From contig OX638153.1 of NCBI GenBank assembly GCA_951804945.1, forward strand, positions 66,092,001 through 66,156,000: DNA of 64,000 bases, in the 5' to 3' direction. The notes under the pieces are model-generated. The model ran no database searches. It saw only the letters and a list, made by a program, of their open reading frames with translations, and was not told where the DNA came from. The DNA is from Podarcis cretensis. Its lineage: Eukaryota. The position numbers and the translations under genes were made by a program. This document shows, one piece after another, positions 1,427-39,932 of this stretch (its first letter is position 1; every line of letters begins with the position of its first letter).

Positions 1427-1557
1427 TCTGCCAGCTGCTACAAGGTTATCAATGCCAAGCAGGTCGTGCTGTAACTCTGTTAGCTTCTGGAAATTCTCCA
1501 AACGGATGAGACTGTTTTGAAGCTGTGATGTAATTTCTGTGATTTCTTTCAGTGCAT
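1427..1557 (-). CDS. FARP2: FARP2 exon 19 (end of DH, DH-PH linker)
   Basis: 131 nt, (N)[43 protein letters not shown]. Confidence 0.95.
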
Positions 1558-2039
1558 CTGCAGAAGGGAATTACAAAAGAAAAGGTCTACTCCAAACCAA
1601 CCAATCAGAGAAGCATGGATAAAAGTACAGGCCAAACTGAAGCAGTGTATGGACATTGCTTTTTTCCAAAAGGAAAAATGGAACGTTACATGTACTTATT
1701 TAAGAGAAGACGCAATCACAGAAATCTCCAAATGATTGGTAAGTGGACAGACTAGCCTAAACATACAAGACCATGCCATTTTAATTAGACCTACCCAAAC
1801 CTTCCAACAATGCTATGGTATCAACAGCTACTAGTCACAATGGCAGTATTTCCTGCAGTATCAGGGGCTGTATGCTGCTGAATGCCATATTTTGCAGAAG
1901 ATGGTGGAAAAGTAAGGAATGGAAGACAGAGATTTTGGAAGCAAGCATAGTATATAAGCCCAGGGACAGTAACAGAGATATGTGTAATAACTCTATTTTG
2001 ACTTCTGAGACTGTAACCCACATTTCTCAGCTGTCTTTA

Positions 2040-2085
<46 letters not shown>

Positions 2086-5000: not shown

Positions 5001-8000
5001 AACAAGATGCACAAGAGACGTTTTGCAAATATTTCATCCGGCAAATTCCAGTTTATAACCAATTTTACCCTGAGGCTAAGGGACTGCAATAACACACAAC
5101 TCACAATTTACACATACAACTATTAAAACAACTCTTTTTTAGGGAAAAGTGGGTTTAAATCACTTACTACAGTTAGGACTTCCAAGTCTTTTAAATAAGT
5201 TCGTTCAGTAGCAAGAATTTCTTTTGCAATGAAATAGGCTTTGTCTGCTGGGTACCTCTGAAAGATAAAAGCAAATCCCAAATAAATGAAACAGAAAATG
5301 TTTCTTATTAAGAAACCTTGGTGGAGCTATATAATAAGACCACTTTGACCATCCAGATGTGCCAATATAAAAGGAGAGCCAAAACCAAAGCCTCCTGCTC
5401 TAAATGGCTTTGAAGTATGTGGCTTTTTAAGGAAATATTTGAATCAACTATGCCCAATGTATTCTTCAGGTGAGGCAATAGGAATCCTTAACCTGAGATG
5501 TGAATATGAGTTTCATTAAGCCACACCCTGATCCTGATCTAGAGTTAGTTGCTTGAAACACACTGTTACCTGTGACCAAGCAGATACAGTAAGAACTAAC
5601 TGGCAGTGGTGCTAATTCACAGATGGGATACAACTGGTAGTGCACATTCCTGACATTGATGGTAACTGACATTCTCAACAGCACTGTCCCATACTGACAT
5701 CAAATCTATTTGGTACTGGCATGAAATATTCCCTTTCCTCTGCTATATGGGCAGGAGAATAGACTGCAGATACGGTGCTGATGCAAAAAGCATTTTCTCC
5801 CACCCCGCTATTTGGGTCATGCAACAACGACAACACTGATCCTCTAGGCTGTATGTGTCTGGACAGAGACATACTGCATCGAAAAGCTTCAACCTCGTTG
5901 TCACATTGAGCCTGATGGAAACAGAAACATGGGTACAGGAAGCCACAAATTTGCTTTTTAATACATCTCATCTAACCTCAGATAAGGCACCAAACCACAA
6001 CCTTGAGGTTTACTGTATTATTTTCAATAGAAAAAGTCCTAGATTAAGATTATGGAACATACTCCAAACACAAAAATGCCCAACCCCAAATTCCCAAATT
6101 CTTCTAAGTGTAAGATACAAAGTGGGAAGATAGAACTCCTAATTGTATGGTTAATTTCCCTCCTGCTTAGACATGCAAAATAAGGGTTTTGCCTTTCGTT
6201 CTAGTTAATTTCACGTTCACCAAGATTGATTCACCAGCATGATTCACCAGCAGTAATCAATATGGTTGTTAAATAAGATAAATTGTCTATGGGTTGAGCT
6301 GAGCTTGCTAAACAACAAAACCAGCTCATTCCCACCTGAAAAATGTGTTAAAGAGAAGGATGTTTTTGACAAGAAATAGTGGATTATTAGACTGCAGAAA
6401 AGCACTCAGAGAGTTGGAATTAATGTACTTTCTATAACTGTCTCTAATGTTTTACAGTACAACTATTCCCCACAAACAGAAAGGACAAAAATGGTGCTCT
6501 TGAGGTACAAAGAAGCATTTAGTTCATATCTCACTTTGAAACAGCTGGAACAAAGGATTGTTCCTTCTAGCAGTTTTACAGTAGCAAAGTGTCGTGTATT
6601 TATTTTAACACAGGTCAAGAAAAACCATTGTGTGGGAAGTTTAATAGTACACAAGTCAGTACAATAGCATAGCACTGGCAGATTTGCACATTGCTAATAT
6701 CTAAGGGCTTATGTACGCTTAACTTTTGCCATGCTCCTTCTATGCAGAGGTCCACACTTTAACGCTCTGTGTCCAAGTGGTTTATTTTGTTTTGTTTTGC
6801 CCCAAGCTTTCCCTGTGAAAACCTGTTTTTCAAAGTTTTCTGTGGATTGTGTTTCCTCTGATTGAAATTTAAAGAGTGGGTTTTTGCGGGGAAAGCTGTA
6901 GAGTAAAAACAAAAGGGGGGAGGGGGGCAACTCGGACACAGAAGTTTAAACCATGGACTGTGTGTGGAAAGAGTAGAGGAAAGGTAAATGTGAATAAGCC
7001 CCAACAAAGAAATCAGAAATTGAAGCAGAGGCTCATGAAACAAACAAACACAAATCACCCTCCTTGTCCTTGCCTTACCTTACGCCTTGCCTCATCCTCT
7101 TCTTCTATCCTGGCACCACCAACATCGCTCAGAACAGGACTCAAAAGAGGAGATGAGCCCTGGCCAGGTGTGTTCATATTCACATGAAACGAGGGGTTCA
7201 GAGTCATTGGACTCTTCATTACAAAGGAAGACAGCTGAGGACCTAAGTATCACATTAGGAAGGAAGTTGGGAGGAGAAAGAGGTTAAGAATTGGTTTTGC
7301 TTCAACAAAATACCACCAGGCACATCGCCAAATCCACATAACACTTGCAAGTAGTTGTCTCCCCTGGTTTGCTTAATTTTTTTTTTTTTTAAATGAGCCC
7401 ACAAATATTTTAAAGCAGTCTTTGAAAATGTTAGGTACAATTTCCTGGACGTCAAACTGGAATTAGCTAAGAATTTAGACTTTCGAACAAAAGCAACCTA
7501 CAACACCAACAATCCCATTCCCTCTGCTATGGCTAAACAGATCAAGACCACAATATACTGCTTCAACATACTCCTCTTGGAGATTTTCTTCCAGTAGCAC
7601 CTTAAAGACCAACTAGGTTAGTACTTGGTATGAGCTTTCGTGTGCATGCACACTTCTTCAGATACACTTCAGATGCACACGAAAGCTCATACCAAGTACT
7701 AACCTAGTTGGTCTTTAAGGTGCTACTGGAAGAAAATTTTTTTATTTTGTTTTGACTATGGCAGACCAACACGGCTACCTATCTGTAACTCCTCTTGGAG
7801 AGTTAGAGTTCTTACTACTTTCTGCAAACAGATCACAAGAGACACAGTGGCCCTGATAAACAGGGAATTGAAAGCAGGAGAACAAAAATGGGAAGGCTCC
7901 ATGTTTTCAGAGTTCAGCATACATTTGATTTCAGAAACTGTGTATGTATGGATAGGAAATATGAAACTAGAAATAGGGAGAATGCAGATTGCATGCCCTT

Positions 8001-15500: not shown

Positions 15501-18500
15501 AGTACCCTACAAGTACTTACAAAACAGAAGGGCATGGAATCCAAACAAATCCTGAATATTTTACTTAATTTCAAAACATACAACATATTTAAGAACAACA
15601 GCTACTAGAAAAGCCTCTGGGGAAGTTAACAGGCACATCTAGAAAATGCACCTGCATTTGACCAATCTTGTATTTAATTATGATAGTTTTGAATAAAATA
15701 TGGGTGTTGTGCAATGCTCCAAATGGAAAGGAAATGGTTGTTTGATTTTAGTAACTGAACTGATCTATTCAATAGGAAGCTTTAACAGGAAATTTGCTGT
15801 ACTGTGCCAAGAGTTCAGAAGTGGATTGCCATAGATATGTTGTTTCTGAGAAGAAATACAATTACCTCACCACACGACCTGGAAGCTGTACGCCGGCTCC
15901 CTCGGCCAATAAAGCGAGATGAGCGCCGCAACCCCCGAGTCCGTCACGACTAGACCTAATGGTCAGGGGTCCCTTTACCTTACTATTTACTAACCGAAGT
16001 TATTTGTACAATCTCAGCATGTACCACCAGTCATTGATCATGACCAATATCTACCGTATTTTTCGCTCTATAACACACACCCGACCATAACACGCACGTA
16101 GTTTTTAGAGGAGGAAAATCCATAGGCATGCCACCCGTAGGCATTTCCTCCATAACACGCACAGACATTTCCCCTTACTTTCTAGGAGGAAAAAAGTGAG
16201 TGTTATGGTGCAAAAAATACGGTAATTTTAGAACTCCTAGCCTGTATCAGCAAAGGTGCATGTATTCTTAACTTTAAAATCTTACTTAAGCAAAGTCCTT
16301 TCTGAATTATGGTTGGCAAAAGTGGGGGGAAAACCCTTTAATCTAGTAATATAACTTTATGGCATCACCAACATAGCTTTAGAATAAGCAAAGCAATACT
16401 TAAAATCCAAGTTAAATATAGAATATGAAAACCCAAGTTGCAGATATTCTCCACATACCCACATGAAGCACAATCTGGCCCTACAGAGTCCTGGTACTTC
16501 TCTGAAAACCTAGAGGGGCAGAGATGTCTGATTGTAAAAAAATCTGACATCTAAAGATTGCATTTCATGGTACAGTAAGCCAGCAACTTGTGCACATCCA
16601 GCTTTATGTGTTTTGCCAAAACAACAACAACAACACTTTTTTTAAAAATGGAAGGGATGTCCTGGGGAAAAGACTTTGGCAATGCCACCTGTGTTTGAAC
16701 CCAGTGTGTTTTGCCTTTATGTGATTTGGCTTCAGGCGCGATCCTTGGAACGTAACCCCCGGGTTAAGTTGCAGGTTTACTATATGTATTATTTAATGTG
16801 CTACTACCGCAACTAGTATAAATTCTTGATGATTTAACCATTTCAGGCACATGGAGCATATCACTGCAGGTATGATAAACTACTAGTGAAAGTGAATCTT
16901 GTATGGGAAAGACTCAGAACAAAAAGCAAACTAATTGGCAGCCCGAAGGCAATTGCTCCATTATGCTGAGCTGCACACTGATAAAATCAGTCTAATAAGA
17001 ATTTGGTCAGGAGGATTATGAAAGTGGTTTTTTAAAGTATGATAGGAAATCCACAGTGAAAACACAATTATCACAGAGTATACAAACCAGATGTGCCTGG
17101 TTCCCCACCACCACCACAGAAAATCTGGTGAAGTTCATATATTGCACAATCTTCCCTTTCACACAGGCATAATTAGGAAATTATAATGGAAAGATACACA
17201 AGCCTATTTAATTAACTCAAGATATAATCCTTTCAGACACAGCCCTAACAGTATTTTAGTTTATTTCCTGTACAAGGTTTGCTTTCCTGCTTTGCAACTC
17301 AAATACATTCTTCAATGTCTATCAGGAGACCTGAGAGAACCAGGTTTTGCCAACTCTCTTACCGCCATAAAATAGTCTTTCAATACCACTTGTATATTCA
17401 TAGTCTAACAATAATAAGATCATTTCCTTGAAGTAGTACCATCTTCAAATAAAAGCTCAAGCAAACCTTTCATATTGATTCAGTTAAGTTACAGCAGGGG
17501 TGAGGAATCTGTGGCCCTCCAGATGCTGTTCCACTCTATCTTCCAAGGCCAATAGCCATGCATGATGTGATTTGTAGCCCAACTGCATATGGAGGACCAC
17601 AGGTTCCCTATCCCTGTTATAGGCTTGTTTCTGCAGAGTAATGTGTTAAAATTCTAACAAAGCACCAACAAGGAAGCGCAAAATATGCCAATGGCCTTTC
17701 AAGACATTTACTGCTCATCAGCAGCGATGCTTTGTAGAGGGTCTGTTATTTGCAAAGTGTACCTAAGTTCAAAATTCAGTGATGCAGTGACCTTCACCAC
17801 AGATGGTTTAAACAATTGCTGGGTGATAAAAAATGCATAGTACAATACATTAGAAAAATCATAATGGCTAGTCTGCACCACTGACATCTACACTTCAAAG
17901 TAGCAACTAATTTATGATGGCTTGAGAAAAATTGGGATAAGGATTTTAAAAAAGGACATGAATTTGAAATCCAATCACTAGAATGAACCAGGTCAGAAAC
18001 AATCTACATTATCTTTTCTCTTTCAAAACCAGATTCCTGAAAGCATAAATTTACGTAATATCAACCAAAATATTAATGGCTTGTGTGTGTGTCTTCTGTT
18101 TTATCTTCCTGGGTGAGATTCTTAAGATTATTCTGAAAATCAAGAGTGAAATTCTCTCTAGTAGCCTCAGCAAAGGGGTTGTTGAAAAAGAGGTTTATGT
18201 CTAATGGGGCTGCAGTTTCTGAATCCCATGAGTCATCAGTGCTACTAGAGTCTTCTGTAGTGGTAGGTGGATAGCTCAGCTGTTCCAACTGGTCAATAAT
18301 GTCAGTGAACTGAAAAGCTGAACTTGACTCAGAGCGAACTGAATATGCTGGAAAATTCACCATTGAACTAGCTTCAGAGTGATTAGCAGAGCTATAAGTG
18401 TGCAAAAATGGCATACCATTTAATGTCAAATTGTTGAGAGAACTACTTTCAGAACGGTTGTTAATTAATGAACTAGTTTCAGAAGGACTCAGAAGACTTT

Positions 18501-21500
18501 GCATTCTGCTTGCCTGAGCTTTAACTTCAAACAATTCCGAGGTATCTGATGGCTGTTCATTCCCATTAAAATCACTCTCTCCTTCAAATTCAAACTCATG
18601 ATCCATGTTCATATCTACTGCTTCTATGGAGCACCTATCAGGACTTGACTGAGAAGACATCATATTTCTTTGCAGAATTTCTTTAGTTAAAGCAGGTGAC
18701 TCTGAGAGACAATTAGTTAGATCTGACTCCTGCAAATCTAAACCATCATACAAATAGGAAAATGCTTCAGAACCTCCAGCAAAAAAGGACATTTCTGCTG
18801 GATCATCATCAATGAACTCTTCTGAAACCTGAAGCTGGGAGCTAACCAGTTTTACAAGTGAGGCACCCCTACCTTGAGGCAGATGCTGTTTAGCAGCAAT
18901 GGCCATACCTGTGGTAAAGTCATCCACATAATTGTCATTTTTACAAGTAATCCTACCTTCTACTGCTACACCTAAACCACAGCTACTCTCAACATCAGTA
19001 CAAGTGGGAGTGCAGTTTTCTGCAACATTACAAAGCCCAACACCTTGGAATGACTGGAGTACTGGTGATCCAGGCTGCTGTATCACTTTCTTCCCAGTTT
19101 CTTCTGATGTCCCACTATTTGCTTCTGCGGCCAAGCTCCTTGTATGGGATATTCTGGGCTCCAAAAATAAAGGCTTGCTCTCTGTGAAAGTGGGCAAGCT
19201 GGCAATGTTTGTGGCTAACGCATTATCCGAATGAAAGGAGGCATATGTACATGCATTAGGCCCAGAGGTTCTTAATCCATCTGTAAATGAGGCACTCTGA
19301 GGAGAAAAACAAGAGAGGAAGCTATTAGACAATCTGTTTTAGGATACATCTAACCATGTCCACTTGATTTGACAGATAAACATGTTTATAAGTTCAAGAA
19401 TTTTACCGAGATGACTTGACTGTGAAGACTGTGGGACTCATCCTTGCCTGTTTTCAGTGTGAGAGACACTACCGCATGACAAAGGTGGGTGAATCGGTGC
19501 CCTCTGCTCTATCTATGGCATTTTAAATCTGGCTCAAGTGTTCAGTCATCCATGATTTGTATTAATTTTAGAAAAAAACATATTGTGCCAACTTTTTAAA
19601 GGTAACCATTTCATTGAGTCTTGAGCTTTGAAAGCCTGTTTCTTCAGATATGGTGGAAGGATACATGCATTATGTGACTATTAGACATAAAGGTAAAGGT
19701 AAAGGTACCCCTGCCCATATGGGCCAGTCTTGACAGACTCTGGGGTTATGCGCCCATCTCACTTAAGAGGCCAGGGGCCAGCGCTGTCCGGAGACACTTC
19801 CGGGTCACGTGGCCAGCGTGACCTATTAGACATAGGCAGATTGTATTGATCACTCACTGGTTTCTCTAGATTTTCATGTCTGTTTTGCATTCATTCCTTT
19901 ATTCTTTTATGTAGAAGTGGCCCTGTTTGGTCTTTATAAAATGGCAGAGGGAATTATTGTGAGGTGATGTATCTTTATTATATGAAATTGAGGATGAATG
20001 AACTCTTCATAGTATGACTAATGATGTTTTCCAGATATAATGTTCGGAGTAGATGAATGGAGAAAACTGGCCCTAGGTTTCTTACAGATAACTCTTCCTC
20101 TTAAGGTCTACATGAGAGTACTATGTTGGTTTAGAATTCTGGATTTGGGACCAGAGAAAGTTGATTCATTATATGACTGTGTTAACTGTAACAGTAATTA
20201 TGCATGAAATCTTGACACTCTGAAATGGCATCTATAGAAAAGTTTTTGCTATTGCAACAGTAAGGAGATTTATTTTCTATACACTGGTAAATCATATCGA
20301 TAATGAACTACAGCTCCTGGCTGATAAAGATATACGAATTATTTAGGACCAAATAGTGATCTGGATCCAAAGAACGGCGTTGTTCCATGTGCCCAAAAAA
20401 AGATTCATGCTTTTAGAACGGCGCCCCCATCCACCCATATATATTCCATGTAGCAAATTTCCTTTGCAAGTAGGTTTTATATGCAGTTTGCAATATGGCA
20501 CGGAGCTCTGCCATTCAAAAGAAAAAAGCTAAAAATTCCCCAGGCAAACACTCAGGAAAAATTGTTTTCCTGTACAAGCTGAAAAACTCTGAAGTTGATT
20601 CAACAGTACACACATATTTAACATTACTACCAGAATTGGGCAAGGCTGAACAGAGCAATGATTGAAAATATATATATAATTTTAAATGCAGACGTCATTC
20701 ATGCTTTAGAATGAAAAGGCTGAGTTTCATAATCTTTCTGATAATTCAAAACAGGTTAATATCAAGACTAACCTGTTTGGGTGTATCAGCATGCAAGGTG
20801 TGAGCAGACATTCTAGTTTTACTATGCCTCCTGTAAAGAAAGAATATGCTGTGATACCCTGATCACTTCATTAGCTATATACAGAAAGCAAATGGGGGGC
20901 CTACAGTAAGAAGCTATTCCTGAAGAATAACCTACTTCATAAGGCTGTTAGGTGTGATAAAGATTAATAGTAATAAATCAACGAGCCTCAGAATTTTGTC
21001 ATTCGTGGATAATTGTTTCTGTTAGACACAGTGACTGCAAATTATAACTTTAACTGGAGAAAGAGGAAAGCTGCAAAAATGTATTTCCATATTCTGTAAG
21101 TTTCAACACAAATATCTAAAATACAAATCCAGGATAGGTTACATTTTTAACATTCAAAAAAATGCTTAAAATGTTTATTCATGTGGTCCAGATGCTCAAG
21201 ATCTGGTACACCTCTCCAAACTCTCAATAGCCAATTTTGGGGTGTGCAGGGGGCTGCAGCATGGAAGAAGAATAGCCAGAAATCATCTCCCTCCCTGTTC
21301 TGCTGACCGATGCTTTTTGTCAGCAGAAGGGAAGCTCTGGATACCATCCGGTAAGTATAACAATGAGCAAATGCAAGATGGTTTACAACATTGGAACAAA
21401 AAAAGACTACATGTCTCCAGTTGGCACTATGTGAAGGAGAGTGAAGTTTAAGCCAACATATTTTCATGCCATTCAATCAAATCACTTTTCTGAATTTGAA

Positions 21501-24500
21501 ACATGTTAAATGGTTTGTCAATTTCAGCTCCTTCCTACTCAACATAATTCCCAGTGTCAAGTATCTAAGCATTTTAATTAATTAAATTTGAAATATAAAA
21601 AATGTCAAATAATACTTTAACAGTTTACAATCTCTAGGAAAAAAGGCCTTTCATTATTGTAGACTAGACTAAGGAAGTTACAAAATAAGAACATCAAAGA
21701 CTCTTTGCTTATATAAAAGAGCTTGTTACCTTTCATATGGGATTTTTTTCAACCCACTTTCTTTAACATAATCCACCAATTGTTTCTGTGTACGCCCACT
21801 GTGAAGAAATAAATGTGAATGTTACAAAAAAATATCCAGGAAAAGTACATGAAATTCTGGGCTTCTTGTACTCAAGAAATAAAGATCCTAAACCTTTAAT
21901 TTAAAAGGAATTACTTTCAAAGTTTTTCTTGGTTCCATTTTCTTGGATCAAAATGAACTGGGTTATATCATACCTGTATCTGAAGGATGACCCTCTGCTG
22001 AAAAAGACTGCTTTTGACTTTGGTTTTGGCTGATCAAACAGCCTGAAGAAAGTGTGATATTCAACACATATTTTCCAGAAGTTCTTGCACTCATCTCTAC
22101 TTCCCAAAAGAAACTCCAGAGTGTCTTGATATGGACCCTAGAAATGAAACACAATGGGACTTTATCATGCTACCTCTACTCATTTAAGGTTACAATGAGA
22201 AAATATTTAATAAAACTTTATTCAACAAAAATAGATGATAGAAGTGAAGAGAAAAACAAAAAATAACAACAAATAATATATATTCGAGACAAGGAGCTTC
22301 AGGAGTGAATATAATGGATTCGATTTTAAAATTGTAAATGGGGTAGAAAAACACAACTTACATTGTACAATGAAGGAAATGGGAATAAAGAAAAATGTAT
22401 TGCCTGTCTATAGAAGCCACCCAATAAAATCTTATTTCAAAGGGATTTGCAATCCATGTAACTGGGATGTCAATAATAATAGTAATTCCTATACCCGCAG
22501 GTCTCAGGGCAGTTCACAGGATAATGTCACAATATAAAAACACAGAATACATAATCAAAATAAAAACAAGAACAACCCAATAACCTCCCTCCATAAATAA
22601 CCTCCAGAGGTGAAATCAGAAGGATCAACATCACTCTCAATGGCTTAAATATCCCATCATTTTTTTCTGAGATGGCAATGAACATTAACTTTCTTGAACC
22701 AGTTATCTAGGGCACATCATGAAGCATCTTTCCAGCCCTGTGTAATAACTAATCAAGTGGCTACAAATTATACAGTTAACTGTTTACATATAAGATCCTC
22801 ATCTCCTTTCTCAAAAATAGACGAAATACATAGTCTAGGGTCCAGGGGCATATTTTTTAATATCTTGGTTCAATGTAGGTCTCGAGAACATGCTCTAGAG
22901 CAGTGGTTCCCAACTTTTACAAGTGTGAAGACCCCTTTTTAACTTTTTTCCCCTCAGATGCCCACATGGGCTCCTTTGAAAGTCAAGTCAGAATATAAAT
23001 AAACTTAAATAATAAATAAATTTTAGAAACACAAGAGAAATTCAGACTTTAATGAAATATGGGTTTTACTAACATGCTTTTATCGTAGTGCTATTACCTG
23101 TGAACCATGTATTCAGGCATTAACAGTACTGAATACTGCATGAACGTCATTTCATATTTAAGGCATGCTTGAAAATGTAGAAGTGACTTTATAATGGAAG
23201 TACTTACATGAACTTCTGGATGAAGCTTGATAAGGAATCGTTTTCTTTTGAAGCTTATTTTTCGGACTTTGGACCAGTTGAAAGTATTGATTTTTGTATT
23301 ACCCTGTGTTCAATTCAATATAAAATAACTGAGGTATATTATACATAGGATTTAAACAGAACATAAGTTATAGACTTATACTGTCAAACCTTTTTTCTAT
23401 CTAAATCATATCGTCTGGATCAGATAACTGATAATTTAAAACAACAAGACTGTTAAAAGAACCTCTAGTTCTGAAAGCAGCCCTCCCTGACCTTGCTACT
23501 CTGGCCTTTGACATTTGAGATAGGTCTTTTCAGGATCCACACTATTCCTGTGATTGCAACCTGTTTTAACTGTTTTTAATTCTGAAAGTTAAATTGTTGT
23601 AACCCGCCCTAGGACCTGCTGGTGAAAGGTGGTAACAGATTTATTAGAACTACTACTACATTTGGACTACAACTCCCATCAGCCCAAGCCAGCGTAATGA
23701 AGGCAATATTACAAACACTCCCATTAGTCTCAAAGAAGAAGCTGCTGCTGCAATGGTGCCCTACTAATCCCATCTGGGTTTGATGAAGAGTGCTGCTGCC
23801 ACAAAGGCATCTGCAAACATCACATTGTCTATTGGGACTGCAAAGACTGTCGTAGCAAAAATTTGGTAGCCATTTGCTCAGAATCAATTGCTACGTGCTC
23901 TAAAGCAGGCATATGGGTCTATCCTCTGAGTTTAAAGTCTTCTGTCTGCACTGCATAACTATAAAAAGTTTCTCACGTTAAATACTGCTTTCCTACCTGG
24001 AATACCAGTACGCCCATGTTTGATACAGCCAAATTAATTTTTGTTCCCTCACGGTCAGATGCCAGATGAAATCTCATGCCATACATCTCCAACTTCCGAG
24101 CTATTTCAAGCACTTGGAAATCTGATTCAGCTGGAGTTTGGCCCCTGTGTTACCAAAATTGAAAATATTATTAATTACTTATAACACTATCCAATGATAT
24201 GAAACAGGAAAAAATACTCTAATATAGTTCAACAAGTTTAATGAGATCATATCCATATTAGTAAGCAGTCACTAAGCTTCAGAGTTATTCAGGTTTACTG
24301 TGCCAGACAAAAAGAGAAAAACCAAATAGCATAAAAATGTGTTACAAATGGAAGAACACATGGCAATCTAGTTGAAGTCATAATCAAACTCAGAGACATT
24401 TAATTATTCTTTAAAACAAATGTATCCTTAATATGCCCTGTATTTCATAATTTTAAATGCAAAATGCTACGTATTCCATAATTTTGTAAAAGATACGCTA

Positions 24501-27500
24501 ACATCTAATCTCTCTTTGTTTGAAAACATGAGAGCAAGTCAGTAAGCAGGCAAGCCCAATTGGACCAAACAGCTTTGCAATGTTCAAGACAGATGCACTA
24601 CAATAGCATCAGTTGACTGTGTTTTTGTATATAGACAACTGGCTCCTGGTGGTTCTCACACCCACCCATTATCTCCAGTTGATAGGTGTCAATCCTTAAT
24701 AGCTGCGCTTAAGTCTGCCTTCTGAATGAGAATGATGGTATTATCCTAGTACAAGGGCAGATCCCCATTATGAATTTAAAGAATATCTAACACACATTCA
24801 AAGTGCATGATTTCATCCAAAGAATCCTGGGAACTGTAGTTTCCCCCTCACATAGCTACAATTCCCAGCACCTTTAACAAACTTTGATTCCCAGGATTCT
24901 TTGGGGGACATGATATGCTTTAAATGTGCACTGATTGTGTTTTAAATGTATGGTGTAGATGTGCCACAGTTGTGTGCAAGTGGTGTTAGGACCCTCTGCA
25001 ACATGCTAGGTCAATTCACTAACACCTTGGGTAGTAGCAGTCCTGAAAATGCAAACAGTCCTCCCAAGCTGTGGTTCCTCTGCCTGTTTAGGGATCAACA
25101 GTCACGGCTGTTACAGATTGCTTGTTGCCTTCTACTCCCCGTATCTCCTCCATCACACAAAAGTGGAGAAGGGGGCATGTAAGCCACAGGCTCATGCACA
25201 CAGATTATAGAGATATTTATTACAGATTTAAATGGTCAACATTTCTATGCTATTCTAGTGCCCAGAAGAATTCCCTGAATAAATGTTTGCCTAGAAAAAC
25301 TGATCAACGTTCTTAAATAACCTTTTACACCTACAGAAGATACTTTATTTCTGAAGTGAGAAAAACCAGTAATTATGCCAAATGATTTACCCTATGCAAG
25401 CAAATGTTTACAAGGGTAAAGCACAGTGAGTAATTATCTTCAGATGTTTTCAGTCTACTAAGCCTCACAGACTGGCCTGAAAACAATCTGGTCTAATTTT
25501 GTTATCTGCTAAGCAGATCAATCCGCTTAGCCATCCTACAACCAGTGAACAGCCAATTTACAGAATTTTCTCAACAATATATATATTCCTGCAGCTGTTT
25601 TTAGGATTTTTTGTTTTTTTAAAAAAAGTTCTGACCTTGCATGGACGATACTTCAACGTTATTGCAATATTCACCAATAAATTAGGGTCAAACTGACATA
25701 AATGTGGTAAGATACTGTACAGTACTTTGAAAAGGCCATTAGGCAGTGTTAATTGGCCAATTCTGCTGCTTTGAACTTGGATAACTTTACATTAATTTGT
25801 AAACTGCATAAGTGAACAAAGTATAATTGCTACATTGGCATTTATAAGGCTCAAGCAAGATTGAAAAGCATAGTTCCAATCATATACTTGCCAATGGCAG
25901 GCGAAATAGTGATGGAGTAGAGAACACTTTCAGAGAATTGGTAGAATGGAGGGGTAGTTAACCCCTCACATGTACACTAATTATATGTTGCAAATGCTGT
26001 CTCACTGGGTTACTTTCCCCTTAGTTAGGACTCATTTATGGTTTTGAAGCCTAGCCTTGTGGGGGATTTAATATCCAGTTTGTAGGAAAGAATCAGCACA
26101 CAGAGAACGCCACACACCTGCTGATTGCTCAACCTTTGCATTAGCACTGTAAGAGGAACATGAAGTTGGAAGCCTCCTGTTTACACAGAGAATTTTGCTG
26201 TGCTGTGTCCACAATAAAATATATTTTATGTTAAGCACAGAGAACAAAATACATTAAATTGCACTGATAATTGGATTAGGGTTTGTTTTCAATGACCATT
26301 ATGATAATGTAGCAGCCTCATACCCATTGTTTGGGAAATCTAAGAAACAAAAAAATCAGTGTAGTTTTGAAATATGTGTTTAAAATCAGTGCTATTTTGA
26401 AAGGTTTATTCCACCATCTTGATTCAAAATGATATCCTATTAAAGGAGAAAACATTGAGGAAAACATTATGCTTAAACCCTATGAAATTGGTTCTTCTTA
26501 AATTTCATTTCTATTCAATAAAGCTTCAAATACCATTGTAATAAAAGAGCAGATTAAATGATTATGTGGTCAGTTTCAGAGTCACACATCTAATAGACTA
26601 TACTGTACAATAAGGAAGAGTATTAAATAAATGCAACAATTCTATCCATCTAAGTCATTCTCTGAGTAGACCCACTGAAAATCAATGGACCAACACCAAA
26701 CTCCTACTTTGAGGGAAAGCTGCCCAGCTTATAGTCTTAACTTACAACTTCTGCTGCAAACCTACTCAGTGGAGTGAGATATATTTCACCTTTGGGATAA
26801 GACTCCACCCTGGAAAGTCTACCTGCCAATCAAGCATATACTGTACTGATTTGCTAGCACTTCCCCTTTCTGTTTCTGTACTCAAAAGCCCCATGGAGTA
26901 TGTATTGGACAACCTCGCATTTACATTACTTTTTAAAAATAGAACTTAGAAACAAGGTTTTCAAAAGAAAAGTGAGGCGAAGACTTCTGTCTTTTCCTTG
27001 ATTTTGTCACTGTCTAAGCAATCAAAAGAATATAAGATGTTTGTTTGCACTGAGCATGAACATGGTCAGAAATGTGGAACCTCTAAAAGCAACGTTTTTA
27101 AAGATTTGTAGTCCTGACATTTGTCAATGGATTCTTCTCAAATTTGGGCATATTATACCACTCTGCAAGTAAATTATAAGAGTCAAATTTCATGCCACAG
27201 ACAAATTTTCTTGCTTTTAGGACCAACAGGTCACCTAGCCAACACAACTAAATTCTCCTTCTAGCATTACTACGAAGGTATAGGTGAAATAACTTATGGT
27301 TAATGAGAGATATAGACAATCTTATTTTGTTATCAATAACAGCAACAAATAGTGCTATGTTGAATACCAGAAATTAAACATTCATTTACACTTACATGTG
27401 CTTCTTGTGAAATTCAAGTATTTTTCCTTGCAGTCTTTCTTGGTTTGGAAAGTACCGGTTGTTTTTAAGATGCTCTCGGTCCCCAGATTCATCAAAATCT

Positions 27501-30500
27501 CCTAACTCAGCTGTGATAGAAGAGAAAAATATATTTGAAAGAAAATATTGCTTCACTATTGCAATTGTTCCCTAAAGTTAGCAAATGGATCCTTGAAGGT
27601 ATCTTCATCTTACAATAACCATTGGTTCTCAATAGTATATATGGGATACGAATGACGAGATTTGGTACCCCTTTATAAAGTTTTGAAATGATCACTCTGA
27701 TGACTGGCACCCACCAGATTCACAAAATGGACTTTGGTAAGACCTAATAGACGGATCTGTTTCATGAGGGGAGGGGTGTTGGGAAAAGGGAAAATTCAGT
27801 GTTCCTGTGCTATCAGAATCAACATATGTGTGAGTAGTTAAGTTCCCAAGGAGATTCAACATAGGCACATTTAACTTTTTTAAAAAACTAAACTTCTAAA
27901 AGCAAGCTGATAAGACAGAAAAGGGGAACATTATTCAAAATGTATGAAGACTTACTGAAAGCATGATAAAAGATATTGAAACAGAATGTATGCCTCCTAT
28001 GTTTTCCCCCAATTTGTAAATGGTATTTATATTAGATTCAAAAGAGCCCAAGAAAGTCCAAGTAGATGCTTGCATTTAATGAGCAACACAAGTGCAAATC
28101 AATTATGTTAATCAAAAATGGCTTCTGGAAGCAACTATAACAGAAGCAGGAAACTAACCAGGGAAGCTGTTGTAACTGCTGGATGACAAAGAAGCAAAAT
28201 AATTACTGATGAAGGAAACTGTAGAGAAGCTGAATGGATTCTTTGCATCTGTGTGCACAATATATAAGTGACATTAGATACTAACACTGCAGAAGGTGAG
28301 AGATGAGGAGTGCTGCTGTATTGTCGTTGCAGGTAAGGCGTTCCTCAGCTAGATCTCTCTTGATTTGCAATGCAAATAGATACCTAAAGGGGGGGAAATC
28401 AATAGTATCATATTTTGTCCATTTTACTAGTTGTTTAGCAGCAGGAAATGAAAAATGGCCCATGCAGGAGTACTACAGGCCAGTTAGTAGCTGCATATAT
28501 GCACAATGCTGACACTGAAGGCAATGTCTGTGTGATAACTAAGAGTAGTAATATAGCATTGTCTCCTCCCCCCTCATACCGCCAACCTGCTTAGTGACAG
28601 CCATTTACTACTACCACATCAGATCACCAGCTGTTGCTAGCCAAGATATATGCTGTCACCAAGCAACATACAACTGCACTACCTCTAAGACTGGCAGGCT
28701 TTGTATCAAATGTGGCTAAGGCTTGTTCAAATGTGAGGTTCAGCTATAGCTCTTGCTACCATCACAACCCTCTCTACCTACTAGCTTCCCTGTGACTGAC
28801 TCATGTCCTGAAGAACCCCCCCCCCAAAAAAAGCTTTCTAGTTAAGCAACATATTTAAGTTTTTCAAAGTCTATTTTAATAATTTTGTAATGCTATTATT
28901 TCTTCAGGTACAATCCTCCACAGAGCATGATAGAACATGCATCCTCACCCATTTCCTATGACTTAGGAGAAACTATGAAATAGATACTTTTTCAAATATA
29001 GCAACATATCCAGTATACCCTGCAGCCATCAACGGCAGTCATTTAGGAAAGGAGGAGTGCAAACAACAGAAAACGGCAGCATGTAGTTTTAGCAGAAACT
29101 CAAAAATCACAACTGAACAGAAAAACTGACAAGCACAGAATCACTGATGGAAAGGTATGTAGGTGGGCTGAAGTAGACAATATAGGAAACACAAATGGCA
29201 CAATTCAGCAGAAAAACAGGTATGTAAGGGCTGGAGTTGAGTAGATCTGCAAGAGGAAGACTTCAATGAGACTCATTAAGAACACAGGAGACACCATTCA
29301 TATGTACTTTCAACTCAAAGCATGGACACAAGAGAACACAATCAAATGGCACAGCAAGTTGGGAACAGAATGAGAAATACCAGATAAACAATCCTGAAAT
29401 TCATAACATCCAAAGGCAACTAACAGAAATATGACTTGCTACCCTGAAGAACCAGTCCCAGTATTTGTAAACTACCATACCAGTGTAATCTTATAAATGT
29501 TTATTCAGAAGTAGTCCTGTTGTGTTTAATGGGCTTTACTCCGATGTAAATATGCACAGGTCAGGATAACAGCCTGAAACCACTGCACCAAGCAGCCAAA
29601 CAAGTTCTTTATCTCTTGAGACAATTTTTAAACATGGACATTTTGAACACATCCTTGGCTGTACACAGCTGTACACAGCTGAAGCAGCATCACTGCCACT
29701 TGATTAGATCAGGTAAAACTTGCTGTCATTCAAGGCCACACACACACATATCAACTCTGGCAGTGAATTCACAGGTCCTTTGAGTTAATTTATTAATCCT
29801 TCTTTCCTATTTCCATTGTAAATTTTTGTGGAATTAATAGTGCCACATTGTTTACCTGGTGTACTCCTCTTGCAGCTGACCAGGGTCAGGAGGGAAGAAC
29901 TTTACGGCTAGACGAAGCAATGCATTCTTTGGTCCTAAAATAAAACCAATGCATTCTATTAACTTTTACCTTTATAGTTGAAACACTGAATCTGAATACC
30001 AATTGCCAACTCTCAAACATGAGGTAATAGGAATTAGGTATTTATTGAATGGATCACGAACATTTCAACTTAAATACAGTAACTCTGAAGTATACCAACA
30101 TAATTCTGAAACATGGTTGTAATATACACCCAAAGCAAGTGATCTGAAATACAGGAGAGGAACCTATATTAGCTAAAGTGCCAGTGGTAGGTAGCTGTTG
30201 AAAACTACTAAATGGTGGAAGGAAAGGGATTAAAGGGATTATGGCGAAACTGGGAGCCAAAATAATACAAGAACATCAAAGAACAGTAAAATGGGCTGAA
30301 TGAATGTGGGAAGTTGGCATAATCAAAAACTGGAATAGGATCTCATGAAGCTCCTAAGGTGATCCAAATTCTAAGGAAATTGCAGCCAGAAAACAAATGT
30401 TGATCTGTGAAACAGGTGAATTCAGGTGAATTCTCTGTTAATTAAAGCATTTTAAAATGTTTTGTTTACTTTTGTTGTATTTTTATTTTTGATACAAGTC

Positions 30501-33500
30501 ATTTTATTATTGAAACAAAAAAGCAGGATGAAACTAATTAACAAAACCTTCTAAAAACAAAGCATTTGAATTGCTGAATGAGCCAGTGGGAATGTAATTT
30601 TGTAAAGCTGCTTTAAAAAAACTTCATTTTTTTGTGTTTTCCATATGAATGTTCTCCAATTCCATTGATTAAGTGAACCTGTGTGTCATGCAAAACAGAT
30701 TATCTTCATTTGCTTCAAATCTCTAGAACGGTCTTCCCCAACATAGTGACCTTCATATGTCTTGGACGAATATTCCTATCATCTTCACCATTGACCATGA
30801 TAGCTGGTAACGATGAGAGCTGTAGCCCAAAACTTCTGTAGGGTACCAGGATGTGGAAAGTCAGGCAATCATATTCTGGCTTAATAAAGTAGCATAGGCA
30901 TGAGCTGCATGCACCTTACCACAGTTAAAAGTATGCTCCAAAACCCTGGCTTATTGGGAGACATGAACCATAGTTCTCAGTTCAGACTTAACAGGAAGCT
31001 ACAGTTAACTCTGGCTTCCTGGATAGTTTCACGCTTGCACAAAGAGGCAGCAAAGGAGCTGCATGTGGGTACACACAGCTCATAGATATCCTGCCTTAAT
31101 CTTCCAAATGTGGCCATGTTAAGAATAGCACCAAAAAGTTGCTAGAATCCTAGAAAGAAACACTAATAGAAATAGTATATATACTTACTTCGTATTTGTT
31201 TAATTATAGGTTTCATAGGCTCAAGCCAAATCTGAACAAGGAAAAAAGGGCTTAGTAAATAATTAAGCAAACACTGCAGCAGTAAATAAAACCACACAGC
31301 TAAAATAATTCTAGCACCTGTAAACCAATACTTCCCTACACCCCCATTTCAGTTAAACAAATGTTTTAGCTAAAGGAATAAACCTCAAAATGTCTATACA
31401 TAGATAGTGAAAAATATAGTGGAAAAGGTAGCAGAAGGAAAGAAGTTTCCTGAGGCAAATGAAGGAAAAGCACTGAGTTCTAGTTATGGCAGAGCACCTT
31501 TCGGAAGGATCACAGGAAAATTCATTTACACTAATGCTTGTGCAACAGAGTCCCTTGCCCAAGAAACTTATGGCAACTCTTTCTGGAGGTTTCAGTGAGG
31601 AGACTGAATGAAATCTGCCCAAGATAATACAGCTAGAGGGCAAAGATTAGAATGAATGACTTGAAATTCCTTTCAAGTATATGAATGCATTTATTCATGC
31701 AAACTTCAAAAATAATGTCAAAGATATTTTTTTATCCACTGAGAAAAAAACTGGGTTTTTTTTGCAAAAGGTCTAGATAGAACTCTACATCTAAATATGC
31801 AAATTCTGCCATCAAATGAAGTACATCAGGCAAGTGTTGTTTGAGTACACTGAATGTCTAGATTCAATTCAATCTGGGTTCAGGCCTGGTTTCATGATTG
31901 AATCAGTCTTTGTCACCCTCAGAAGAGGGACGGCGAAAATGCAACGCTGTTACGATTACTTGATCTCTCAGTGGTTTTTGACCCCACTGACCATATCTTC
32001 CTACATCAACTGTTCAGGATCAGTATAGGAGGCAATGTATTACCGTAGCACTGTTCCTACCTATGTGGGTGAGTTCAGAGTGTAACAGTGGGACAACAAT
32101 GTTCTATGGCCTCCTGCACTTGTGTTATGTAATTCTGCAAGGCACAATTTGGTCCCCAGTGCTATTTAACATCTATATCTACTACACCTTAACATCTGGA
32201 TCTGGAAAGGCTGTGCAAGTCCTGGATCTATGCCTGAATGCAGTTGTGGACTGGATAAGGGCCAACAAACTAAGTTTGAAACCTGGTAAGAAAGAGGCTC
32301 TGTGGGTAGGTTCTTACATCCTGAAGATACTGCACTCCCTCTGAACAATCAGGTATGTAGTTTAGATAAACCTTTGTCATTAGAGGTCCAAGTGAATTCT
32401 GTGGCTAGCAGTGCCTTTCCCCAGTTATGGCAGTATATGGATTGGGATAGCCACTGTAGTCCATGCAACTTCACCAACACACAACATGTGCAATGGTGCA
32501 CTCCACCACGTGTCTAGTTGACTTCACATCAAGCCTTATGCCATTTATGTCATAGGTATTGTCAGGCCTGTTTCATTGCTCAAGGTTATATTACTTGATC
32601 CCAGTCATGGACTTCCTAAACAGCTTTGTTTGATCTACATTTTACTTTTATCCCTTGTAGCACAACATCTTGATTCTATGTCAAAAGATACAGTACAAAC
32701 GCTACACAGTAGAAATGAGATTCCAATTTATACAGCACTCCATTTCAACTCTAAAAATGCTAATCAAGTGGTTTGGTGTCTTTTCTTGAAACACCGTTCT
32801 TTTTGAATCATAGCAAAAACTAATAAAATTCATTGAAAAGGAACTAAACACTCAAATTAAGAGAGCTCCATAATAAGCAAAGTAGGTAGTGCTTGATTTA
32901 AAAATGGAAGGACCAAAAAAGAGCATTCAACACAACTGTGTAGGGTTATTATCTGAAACAACTGCAGCTGCATCACTAATGGTGCAGCTTTGCTTACCTG
33001 TAATATAATCCTCTTTCTCCTACATTAAAGGAATTTTTGTGCAAATTTAACCAGAGTAGAACTACCAAATGTCTTCCTTTAAAAACAAAGCTGAAAACAC
33101 ATCTATTTAAAGGTGTTTATATTCAGATAAAAATATATTACATACCCAATATGACTGCATGTTCTGGAATTCAATTCCAAAGTAGTCCGATTCAACCAAA
33201 TTCAACCGATTAAATACTTCTGTCATCAGTTTCTGGCCATAACATTTTGACTAGAAAAAATAAAATAAAGTGAAAATGTAAAGTTGAGTTTACTTGAAAA
33301 GTAATGGCTAAAGCTGGTTTCAAGGCTTAACCTGGAAACAAAAAGATAAAAATAGTTCATGCCAATTTAATGCTACTTCTGCACATATATCAACACAATG
33401 CATTAGAATTCTTCTTTCTTTGCCACTTCCATGTGGCCTGCATTCAAAAAAATGAACCACAACTGTTAAAATTTTCATGCCATATATAAATGCACAGCCT

Positions 33501-39500: not shown

Positions 39501-39932
39501 CTTAGTCATGCTGCCACATGACCCGGAAGTTGTACACTGGCTCCCTCGGCCAGTAAAGCGAGATGAGCACCGCAACCCCAGAGTCGGTCACGACTGGACC
39601 TAATGGTCAGGGGTCCCTTTACCTTTATATTAATTATGCCATTTCCGTCTAGTATATAGGTGGTATATTTCAAAATACATTTTCATTTATACACTATCAT
39701 TGTAAGCAAATTTTACTAAAATGGAAGTAGAAGGTTTCTACTAATTTCAATCACACTAGAACATAGCAGGAGTTTCTATTAAGTACTTTTAAACAAAAGC
39801 TGGATTGTACAGTGCCTTCCTAAGATATTACAGTAGTGTTAGAGAGAAGTTAGCCTTGACATTTCATGACTCTTCCAACAATCAATTTCATTATAGGGTT
39901 GGGATTTTGATGCCAAATAAATTCTGAATGCT

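What the first reader, a model, noticed from the sequence alone, without database searches (positions are those of the whole stretch)
18073..19296. Hidden alternative terminal exon: an 800-aa FERM-only, GEF-less FARP2 isoform
Seen: exon 13 (acceptor 19296) reads through its weak donor (AAG|GTGTTG, 19044) with no stop until 18075-18073. That is 407 codons, 322 of them in what would otherwise be intron 13. Exons 2-12 give 393 aa, so the product is 800 aa: FERM+FA plus an acidic, Ser-rich, probably disordered tail, with no DH/PH. A 322-codon open frame in AT-rich intron is very unlikely without selection, and it shows no TE features. Recalled knowledge: the paralogue FRMD7 is FERM-FA plus one large terminal exon starting after a similar ...KQ| junction, with no DH-PH. 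Inference: one locus makes both a GEF-domain protein and an FRMD7-like scaffold or dominant-negative competitor for FERM partners such as plexins.
Basis: partly seen in the sequence, partly recalled or inferred. Interest (0 to 1): 0.88.

Follow-up and report, generated by a model that had tools for sequence, protein, structure and literature searches.

The report
Conserved GEF-less FARP2 short isoform
In this wall-lizard FARP2 gene, roughly half of the transcripts ignore a weak splice site and read on through a 322-codon extension, giving an 800-residue protein that has the FERM membrane-binding domain and a conserved acidic tail but no GEF domain. The isoform is real and ancient, and it is already in the sequence databases, though I found no paper that studies it.

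Summary
The frame on the minus strand from 19296 to 18076 is open for 407 codons, 322 of them past the canonical donor at 19044. The chance of that is about 2e-10. The gene is FARP2, with DH exons further downstream in the window.

The isoform is real:
- Stranded RNA-seq from a congener shows no depth in intron 12 outside a repeat.
- Depth past the donor, through the whole ORF and into a UTR, stays at about 50% of the exon-13 level.
- RNA assemblies branch at the donor into a spliced path and a read-through path.

The tail is under strong selection. Three blocks are as conserved from sharks to lizards as the FERM domain itself (0.83–0.84 against 0.81). The constitutive part of exon 13 is not (0.47). 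AlphaFold2 predicts the tail as mostly disordered, with two short helices on conserved blocks.

It is not hidden. UniProt/Ensembl already lists an 800-aa Podarcis muralis FARP2 that is 99% identical over the tail. Equivalent proteins of about 760–806 aa exist for mouse (D3Z4C0), opossum, birds, coelacanth, elephant shark and teleosts.

C. elegans frm-3a/frm-3b has the same gene architecture. Sequence homology to the FRMD7 tail was not shown. The scaffold or competitor role remains an inference.

The parts
47914..48123 (-).
   Evidence: tblastn of P0042/P0148 residues 1-70, 96% identity. Boundaries are approximate at the 3' side.
20773..33250 (-). Ten further FERM/FA coding exons: about 33250-33143, 31231-31190, 29932-29855, 28385-28284, 27517-27395, 24149-23997, 23306-23208, 22137-21976, 21833-21729, 20832-20773
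   Evidence: Exon-by-exon tblastn with P0003, P0016, P0042 and P0148. Both ends of exon 12 are supported: 20773 by the splice joint, 20832 by loose ends.
19044..19296 (-). Exon 13, constitutive part (84 codons plus 1 base); poorly conserved linker
   Evidence: Acceptor joint 20773 to 19296 in 4 runs. Donor AAG|GTGTTG at 19044. Mean column conservation 0.47.
18076..19043 (-). Read-through extension of exon 13: 322 codons of acidic, Ser-rich, mostly disordered tail
   Evidence: Open frame. RNA depth 6.5-21 (X21) and 4.5-17.5 (X22), against 24 and 18 in the constitutive part. Read-through contig 17496-19071. 99% identical to P0042 residues 479-800.
18751..18840 (-). Conserved block A (...[26 protein letters not shown]...)
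   Evidence: Mean conservation 0.83 across 18 gnathostomes; 13 columns at 90% or more.
18421..18570 (-). Conserved block B (...[34 protein letters not shown]...); contains predicted helix 1 (18490-18540)
   Evidence: Conservation 0.74. AlphaFold2 helix at residues 253-269, pLDDT about 63-66.
18172..18384 (-). Conserved block C (...[44 protein letters not shown]...W...NLFF.NP.); contains predicted helix 2 (18277-18309)
   Evidence: Conservation 0.84; 37 of 71 columns at 90% or more, from shark to lizard. AlphaFold2 helix at residues 330-340, pLDDT about 73.
18073..18075 (-). Stop codon TAA of the short isoform
   Evidence: The end of the protein lies at a similar position in the orthologues.
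16400..18072 (-). 3' UTR of the short isoform. It runs at least to about 17150, and some transcripts continue to 16400 or beyond.
   Evidence: Same-strand RNA depth of 3-21 throughout. Depth drops from 21.6 to 7.8 (X21) and from 13.9 to 7.9 (X22) near 17150. X3 contigs end at 17105.
17207..17265 (-). Candidate poly(A) signals: AATAAA at 17265-17260 and ATTAAA at 17212-17207
   Evidence: They lie just upstream of the depth drop. No poly(A)-tailed reads were seen, so use of these signals is inferred.
18873..18873 (-). Second phase-compatible donor AAG|GTAGGG (last exon base 18873), the site used in the 1106-aa snake FARP2 models
   Evidence: No read evidence for its use here in the rows shown.
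7079..7237 (-). Exon 14 (linker) of the canonical GEF isoform, joined to the 19044 donor
   Evidence: tblastn of P0148 residues 476-532. Contig loose ends at 19042 match its first bases.
1427..5260 (-). DH-domain exons of the canonical isoform (5260-5168, 4848-4714, 4301-4221, 3802-3554, 1555-1427). The gene runs off the window.
   Evidence: tblastn of P0148 and P0016. RhoGEF Pfam domain in P0016.

Best explanation
The window holds FARP2 of a Podarcis wall lizard on the minus strand. Exon 13 is a composite exon. When its weak 5' splice site (AAG|GTGTTG, 19044) is used, the transcript continues to exon 14 and the DH-PH-PH exons and encodes the canonical GEF of about 1048 aa. When the site is not used, the exon runs on for 322 more codons to a TAA at 18075-18073 and ends in a 3' UTR inside intron 13. 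That gives an 800-aa protein: FERM + FA + a 407-residue acidic, Ser-rich tail, with no GEF module. Shown here: both transcript forms exist at comparable levels, and the tail has been kept open and strongly conserved since the origin of jawed vertebrates. The tail is mostly disordered, with three invariant blocks and two short helices. Inferred: the 3' end is made by intronic polyadenylation, probably near 17150-17200, in competition with the weak donor. Also inferred: the protein goes to the same membranes and receptors as full-length FARP2 through FERM-FA, and its conserved tail modules recruit partners of their own. On that reading it has a GEF-independent scaffold function of its own, as C. 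elegans FRM-3A has, and is more than a passive dominant-negative.
For: ORF and chance estimate. Gene identity and both exon paths. RNA: stranded reads lie on one strand only. Intron 12 depth is 0 outside a repeat. Tail depth averages about 12.5 (X21) and 10.1 (X22), against 23.7 and 18.2 in constitutive exon 13. Contig depths are 79.7 for read-through against 165.4 for exon 13 in X3, and 5.4-9.4 against 18.8 in X1. A read-through contig spans 17496-19071. The spliced contig's loose end equals the exon-14 start. Transcript-sized contigs in other species carry the whole FERM+tail ORF: P0019, 802 aa on 2,701 nt; mouse P0080, 795 aa on 81 contigs of up to 6.5 kb. Exact product in a database: P0042, 800 aa, 99% identity. 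Selection: blocks A and C score 0.83-0.84, equal to FERM at 0.81, while constitutive exon 13 scores 0.47. Lizard-to-shark identity in block C is 51-55 of 71. Congener differences number 4 in 968 nt of the tail (3 synonymous) against 17 in 773 nt of the UTR, Fisher p = 7e-4. Disorder and helices. Architectural precedent with a proven GEF-independent function: frm-3a/b (PMC7260190).
Against: No poly(A)-tailed reads or clustered 3' ends were seen, and RNA depth continues at 3-14x to the edge of the laid stretch at 16400. Retention of a longer part of intron 13 in some molecules is therefore not excluded. The RNA runs come from congeners (1-2.5% divergent), not from the window's own individual. 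The list of differences is incomplete (28 rows were not shown), so the substitution-density test is indicative only. No protein-level evidence was available. The tail function has no support beyond conservation. The FERM-tail complex prediction gave no verdict.
Confidence: 0.88

Rival explanations
1. The conserved ORF serves mainly as an internal exon extension of a longer GEF-containing FARP2 of about 1250-1370 aa. A distal donor near the end of the tail would splice to the linker or DH exons, as in many bird, turtle, frog and lemur models. On this reading the 800-aa stop is incidental.
For: Long models carrying about 93% of the tail followed by DH-PH exist in many species, for example Caretta X1 at 1355 aa, Mauremys X4, Ciconia, Colinus, Eulemur X1 at 1294 aa, and frogs at 1220-1400 aa. 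Snake models of 1106 aa use an intermediate donor whose counterpart, AAG|GTAGGG, exists here at 18873.
Against: The exit point from the tail differs between clades. One ostrich model simply runs through the stop position, which looks like model-building. This window has no phase-1 GT after codon 351. The bird site reads ACT AGA GAG here, so block C cannot be joined in frame to exon 14. Models of about 800 aa ending at the same stop region are the commonest form, and cDNA-sized contigs carry them. No joint or loose end other than the one at 19042 was reported within the ORF among the rows shown.
Confidence: 0.07
2. The signal past the donor is a retained or detained intron with no protein product, and the open frame is tolerated but not translated.
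For: Depth continues beyond the likely poly(A) signals to at least 16400. No clustered transcript ends were detected.
Against: The neighbouring intron 12 has zero depth, so unspliced background is negligible. The chance of the open frame is 2e-10. The frame is open and up to 84% column-conserved across about 450 million years, with mostly synonymous change between congeners. Non-coding retention cannot explain that.
Confidence: 0.03
3. The tail is a separate gene nested in intron 13 with its own promoter. One pipeline annotates it as an 'uncharacterized serine-rich protein'. On this reading it is not part of FARP2.
For: Many database entries are tail-only ORFs of 250-540 aa, and one is named as an independent protein in Galeopterus.
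Against: Those entries come from short genomic or partial contigs. The frame enters through the exon-13 acceptor. The read-through contig overlaps constitutive exon 13 by 27 nt. Depth is continuous and on one strand, and the rows shown report no alternative 5' junctions within the ORF. Full FERM+tail ORFs sit on single cDNA-sized contigs in a skink, mouse and others.
Confidence: 0.02

Closest known systems
Annotated short FARP2 proteins: Podarcis muralis UniProt/Ensembl entry (P0042, 800 aa), mouse D3Z4C0 (795 aa), and others in dog, opossum, coelacanth, Callorhinchus and Astyanax
   Same: Identical architecture: FERM_N/M/C + FA + the same tail, with no DH/PH. P0042 is 99% identical over the 407 residues and has exactly the predicted length.
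   Different: Nothing structural. The window is a congener or allele with 4 amino-acid differences in this exon. These entries are automatic annotations, and I found no paper that describes them.
C. elegans frm-3 (FARP1/2 orthologue): isoforms FRM-3A and FRM-3B (PMC7260190)
   Same: One gene gives a FERM-FA protein with a domain-less C-terminal part (FRM-3A) and a FARP-type protein (FRM-3B). [quoted passage not shown] FERM-FA alone is necessary and sufficient for its synaptic role, and it recruits LIN-2/CASK.
   Different: Tail sequence similarity between worm and vertebrates was not tested, because no FRM-3 sequence was in hand. The shared architecture could be ancestral or convergent.
FRMD7 (vertebrate paralogue; X-linked infantile nystagmus gene)
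   Same: FERM + FA + a long C-terminal region without recognisable domains. It has 12 exons and 714 aa. FARP1 and FARP2 are its closest homologues, and it binds CASK.
   Different: FRMD7 has no DH-PH exons at all. [quoted passage not shown] No FRMD7-type protein appeared among the tail's relatives in an exhaustive phmmer search, or in the top 120 rows of two word-seeded searches. Tail homology is therefore not shown.
Composite terminal exons / intronic polyadenylation isoforms in general
   Same: A weak 5' splice site followed by an in-frame extension, a stop, a UTR and poly(A) signals inside the intron. This truncates the protein before its catalytic domains.
   Different: Most such extensions add a few unconserved residues. 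This one adds 322 codons, with blocks as conserved as the protein's main folded domain.

Membership tests
FARP2 gene (FERM, ARHGEF and pleckstrin domain protein 2) | FERM_N, FERM_M, FERM_C and FA domains encoded upstream on the same strand | tested here: met
   Exon-by-exon tblastn. Pfam domains on homologues P0003 and P0009, and precomputed for P0042.
FARP2 gene (FERM, ARHGEF and pleckstrin domain protein 2) | DH (RhoGEF) exons downstream on the same strand, joined to exon 13 | tested here: met
   P0148 and P0016 map to 7237-7079 and 5260-1427. The spliced contig's loose end matches exon 14. The PH exons lie beyond the window.
FARP2 gene (FERM, ARHGEF and pleckstrin domain protein 2) | Orthology to named FARP2 and not to FARP1 or FRMD7 | tested here: met
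   90-100% identity, exon by exon, to the Podarcis muralis and Zootoca entries named FARP2. No tree was built.
Alternative (composite) terminal exon made by intronic polyadenylation | Transcripts continue past the 5' splice site while neighbouring introns are cleanly removed | tested here: met
   intron 12 depth is 0. Tail depth is about 50% of exon 13. A read-through contig spans 17496-19071.
Alternative (composite) terminal exon made by intronic polyadenylation | Cleavage and polyadenylation site inside the intron | tested here: inconclusive
   AATAAA and ATTAAA lie at 17265-17207, and depth drops near 17150. No poly(A) reads or clustered ends were seen, and some depth continues to 16400.
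Alternative (composite) terminal exon made by intronic polyadenylation | The extension is coding and under purifying selection | tested here: met
FRMD7-like proteins | FERM + FA + a long domain-less C-terminus, with no DH/PH | tested here: met
   Architecture of P0042 and the window product, against the FRMD7 description in PMC3163398.
FRMD7-like proteins | Sequence homology of the C-terminal region to the FRMD7 C-terminal domain | tested here: not met
   phmmer of the tail against 1.84 billion representatives gave 18 hits. Seventeen carry FARP2-type sequence, and one (P0018) is an unrelated repeat protein. The profile search was saturated by FARP2, so weak similarity remains possible. No FRMD7 sequence could be obtained for a direct profile comparison.
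FRMD7-like proteins | Terminal exon starting at the homologous ...KQ| junction | not testable with these tools
frm-3a/frm-3b-type dual output of a FARP gene | The GEF isoform arises from a splice donor inside the last exon of the FERM-FA-only isoform | tested here: met
   Here. In the worm: (PMC7260190).
frm-3a/frm-3b-type dual output of a FARP gene | Tail homologous between worm and vertebrate | not tested
   No FRM-3A sequence was in hand.

The most novel reading that the evidence does not exclude
The FERM-FA-plus-tail product is an ancestral output of FARP genes with a function of its own, and not a by-product. The composite-exon architecture is shared with C. elegans frm-3a/b. FRMD7 would then be the paralogue that kept only this form. 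The three invariant tail blocks would be docking modules for as yet unknown partners, giving FARP2 a GEF-independent scaffold role that published FARP2 knock-outs and GEF-centred models have not separated out. Two truncated mammalian hits hint that the tail may have been lost in some mammals.
Probability: 0.3. Interest if true: 0.65.

Novelty: already known. Interest (0 to 1): 0.4.

Why it matters
FARP2 is treated in the literature as a Rac/Cdc42 GEF acting downstream of plexins. The reviews and papers I could search do not mention a GEF-less isoform. Yet in lizard RNA about half of the FARP2 transcripts encode a protein with no GEF module, and its tail carries blocks conserved since the origin of jawed vertebrates as strongly as the FERM domain. 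Experiments that delete early exons remove both proteins. Experiments that target the DH/PH exons, or use C-terminal antibodies, see only one. The short form could therefore explain GEF-independent FARP2 phenotypes, and it links FARP2 to what is known of FRM-3A and FRMD7 (FERM-FA scaffolds that bind CASK). For the genome scan itself this is a correct reading of a feature that annotation pipelines already capture.

Tried and rejected
- **Tail folding back on its own FERM domain (C-ERMAD-like):** Complex prediction of P0042 48-365 with 540-800 gave no verdict, score 0.00. This is no evidence either way.
- **Known domain in the tail:** Pfam on the ORF and on 27 tail homologues gave only sub-threshold chance hits. 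The tail profile against all PDB sequences gave 0 hits at E up to 10. The ESM Atlas gave no usable hit.
- **Calpastatin-like helix:** P0018 has 7 repeats resembling block C, and one of them overlaps a Pfam Calpain_inhib match. No tail member matches that family and no calpastatin chain was hit. I dropped it as a weak lead.
- **FRMD7, FARP1 or invertebrate tails:** the profile search was saturated by FARP2 entries in its 120 rows, because the length window followed the alignment columns. No FRMD7 sequence could be obtained, so no direct comparison was made.
- **Orthologous DNA for dN/dS:** I used protein conservation and congener read differences instead.
- **Structured RNA in or near the exon:** Rfam on 16000-21000 found nothing.
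- **Earlier notes of this scan:** none for this place.
- **Joined model:** The 800-aa product rests on exon-by-exon matches to database proteins.
- **P0013 and P0017:** these two short hits look primate-like to me. I did not look up their source or analyse them further.


Full report
**The observation.** On the minus strand, 19296-18076 translates to 407 sense codons followed by TAA at 18075-18073. This is by far the longest open frame in any of the six frames of the window: 421 codons stop-to-stop, against 185 for the next. With the base composition of intron 13, a stop is expected every 15 codons or so. The chance of 322 open codons is then 2.3e-10, or about 3e-5 expected in the whole window. 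The tail is acidic (pI 4.06) and 14.6% serine. It has no Pfam domain.

**The gene.** Exon-by-exon tblastn with database proteins places 11 coding exons of a FERM-FA protein upstream, from 48123 to 20773. A linker exon (7237-7079) and DH-domain exons (5260-1427) lie downstream on the same strand. The best matches are proteins named FARP2 from lacertid lizards. The canonical junction in the Zootoca model...SFQG|PQLSS..., corresponds to the donor AAG|GTGTTG (last exon base 19044) and the acceptor at 7237. All statements about the product rest on these per-exon matches.

**Is it already annotated?** Yes. An exhaustive phmmer search of the 407-residue ORF found 18 cluster representatives. A word-seeded search with names found more than 150.
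- P0042 is the UniProt/Ensembl entry 'FERM, ARH/RhoGEF and pleckstrin domain protein 2' of Podarcis muralis. It is 800 aa long, and its residues 394-800 match the window ORF at 99%, with 4 differences.
- FERM+FA+tail proteins of about 760-806 aa are listed for skinks, monitor lizard, snakes, tuatara, many birds, mouse (D3Z4C0, 795 aa), hamster, chinchilla, dog, bats, opossum, coelacanth, elephant shark (800 aa), a stingray (803 aa), sturgeon, bichir and teleosts. Frogs have versions of about 710 aa.
- Several sit on contigs of 2.4-8 kb, which can only be spliced cDNA. Examples are P0019, 802 aa on 2,701 nt, and the mouse protein on 81 contigs.

**RNA evidence.** I laid two stranded raw RNA-seq runs (X21, X22) and two RNA assemblies (X3, X1) on 16400-20900.
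- All the runs are from congeners. The differences in the X21/X22 reads reproduce the four P0042 residues, so those runs match P. muralis.
- All reads over the gene lie in one orientation.
- Intron 12 has depth 0, apart from a repeat at about 19690-19820.
- The exon 12 to exon 13 joint is seen in all four runs.
- Depth in constitutive exon 13 is 23.7 (X21) and 18.2 (X22). Across the extension it averages about 12.5 and 10.1. It continues into the region downstream of the stop.
- In the assemblies the graph branches at 19042-19071. One path has a loose end that is the reverse complement of the exon-14 start. The other is a 1,579-nt contig running 17496-19071. Depths are 79.7 against 165.4 in X3, and 5.4-9.4 against 18.8 in X1.
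- So about 30-55% of FARP2 transcripts in these samples read through the donor.
- Depth falls near 17150, just downstream of AATAAA (17265-17260) and ATTAAA (17212-17207). However, no poly(A) reads or clustered ends were reported, and some depth reaches 16400. The exact 3' end is not settled.

**Selection.** I aligned 18 short-form proteins, from shark to lizard. The constitutive part of exon 13 is poorly conserved: mean majority fraction 0.47, with 1 column at 90% or more. The extension contains three blocks that match or approach the FERM-FA region (0.81):

| Block | Window coordinates | Conservation |
|---|---|---|
| A | 18840-18751 | 0.83 |
| B | 18570-18421 | 0.74 |
| C | 18384-18172 | 0.84 (37 of 71 columns at 90% or more) |

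Between lizard and cartilaginous fishes, 51-55 of the 71 block-C residues are identical. Between the window and the congener reads, the extension has 4 differences in 968 nt (3 synonymous). The UTR has 17 in 773 nt (p = 7e-4). The constitutive part has 3 differences, all non-synonymous. That list was truncated by the tool, so the test is indicative only. A formal dN/dS was not possible because orthologous DNA could not be fetched.

**Structure.** AlphaFold2 with a 27-sequence alignment gives a mean pLDDT of 47.7. It predicts no fold and only two short helices, at residues 253-269 and 330-340 of the ORF. Both lie on conserved blocks. The tail is best described as an intrinsically disordered region that carries conserved linear modules.

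**Other splice options.**
- Many models of 1220-1400 aa in birds, turtles, frogs and a lemur leave the tail near its end and continue into the linker or DH exons. The exit point differs between clades, and some models are plainly forced.
- This window has no phase-compatible GT after codon 351. The bird site reads ACT AGA GAG here. A long GEF form that includes block C is therefore not available here by that route.
- A donor AAG|GTAGGG at 18873 corresponds to the one used in the 1106-aa snake models. The rows shown give no sign that it is used.

**Comparison with known systems.**
- C. elegans frm-3, the FARP1/2 orthologue, makes FRM-3A (FERM-FA plus a C-terminal part without a recognisable domain) and FRM-3B. 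[quoted passage not shown] FERM-FA is necessary and sufficient for GABA-A receptor clustering, and it recruits LIN-2/CASK (PMC7260190). That is the same gene logic as here.
- FRMD7 has 12 exons and 714 residues.
- No FRMD7-type protein turned up among the tail's sequence relatives, and I could not obtain an FRMD7 sequence for a profile comparison. Tail homology is therefore not shown.
- I found no paper describing a GEF-less vertebrate FARP2 isoform. The library does not cover all journals.

**Mechanism.**
- Shown: two mRNA forms arise from one locus, decided at the weak donor of exon 13. The short form encodes FERM-FA plus a conserved disordered tail and lacks DH-PH.
- Inferred: competition between U1 recognition of GTGTTG and cleavage/polyadenylation within the first 2-3 kb of intron 13.
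- Inferred: the short protein is targeted through FERM-FA to the same membrane sites and receptors as full-length FARP2.
- Inferred: the tail blocks bind separate partners. The depth of conservation argues for a positive function of the tail, and not mere competition. A FERM-FA stump would be enough for competition.

**Leads that failed.** A FERM-tail complex prediction gave no verdict. A resemblance of block C to repeats in a calpastatin-like protein (P0018) was not backed by Pfam or PDB profile searches. Rfam found nothing in the region.

**Verdict.** The feature is a genuine, major and ancient isoform. It is already present in public annotation, including the exact 800-aa protein in the sister species, so it is not a discovery of this scan. 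What remains open, and moderately interesting, is its function, its relation to FRMD7 and FRM-3A, and its apparent absence from the FARP2 literature.

Noticed in passing
window 19694-19822 (intron 12), second copy 39505-39627: A dispersed repeat of about 130 nt, flanked by a direct duplication (TATTAGACATA). It has very high RNA depth on both strands, with loose ends on both sides, so it is carried in many unrelated transcripts. A 77%-identical copy lies elsewhere in the window. There is no Rfam match. It is probably a squamate SINE.
   Followed up: partly
P0018 (1824 aa), against window 18172-18330: A repeat protein with seven copies of a motif (...FSDALDQLEQQLG...TREDA...WDEQ) that resembles tail block C. 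One copy coincides with a Pfam Calpain_inhib match. No FARP2 tail matches that family, and no calpastatin chain was hit by the tail profile. The similarity is unexplained.
   Followed up: partly
P0013 (138 aa) and P0017 (196 aa), hits: Two short ORFs with mammal-type exon-13 sequence end early inside the extension. P0017 stops before block A. P0013 stops soon after block A, following a stretch unlike the other tails. This hints that the tail frame is broken in some mammals. They look primate-like to me from memory, so I did not look up their source or search further.
   Followed up: no
window 18873, 18909, 18957 (minus strand): Three further phase-compatible GT donors inside the extension have a better consensus match (7 of 9) than the canonical donor (6 of 9). 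The one at 18873 corresponds to the donor used in the 1106-aa snake FARP2 models, which would add 57 residues to the GEF isoform. No read evidence for its use appeared in the rows shown.
   Followed up: partly
Bird models P0050, P0055, P0058: Several bird gene models fuse a septin-type GTPase domain to the FARP2 FERM+tail protein. These are probably read-through mis-annotations with the neighbouring gene. They show how pipelines handle the short form inconsistently.
   Followed up: no
window about 17105-17120: A short GGT/ACC microsatellite whose length differs between the window and the congener contig (loose end CACCACC... at 17105 in X3). It coincides with the end of the assembled UTR contig, so that contig end may be an assembly break and not a transcript end.
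   Followed up: no
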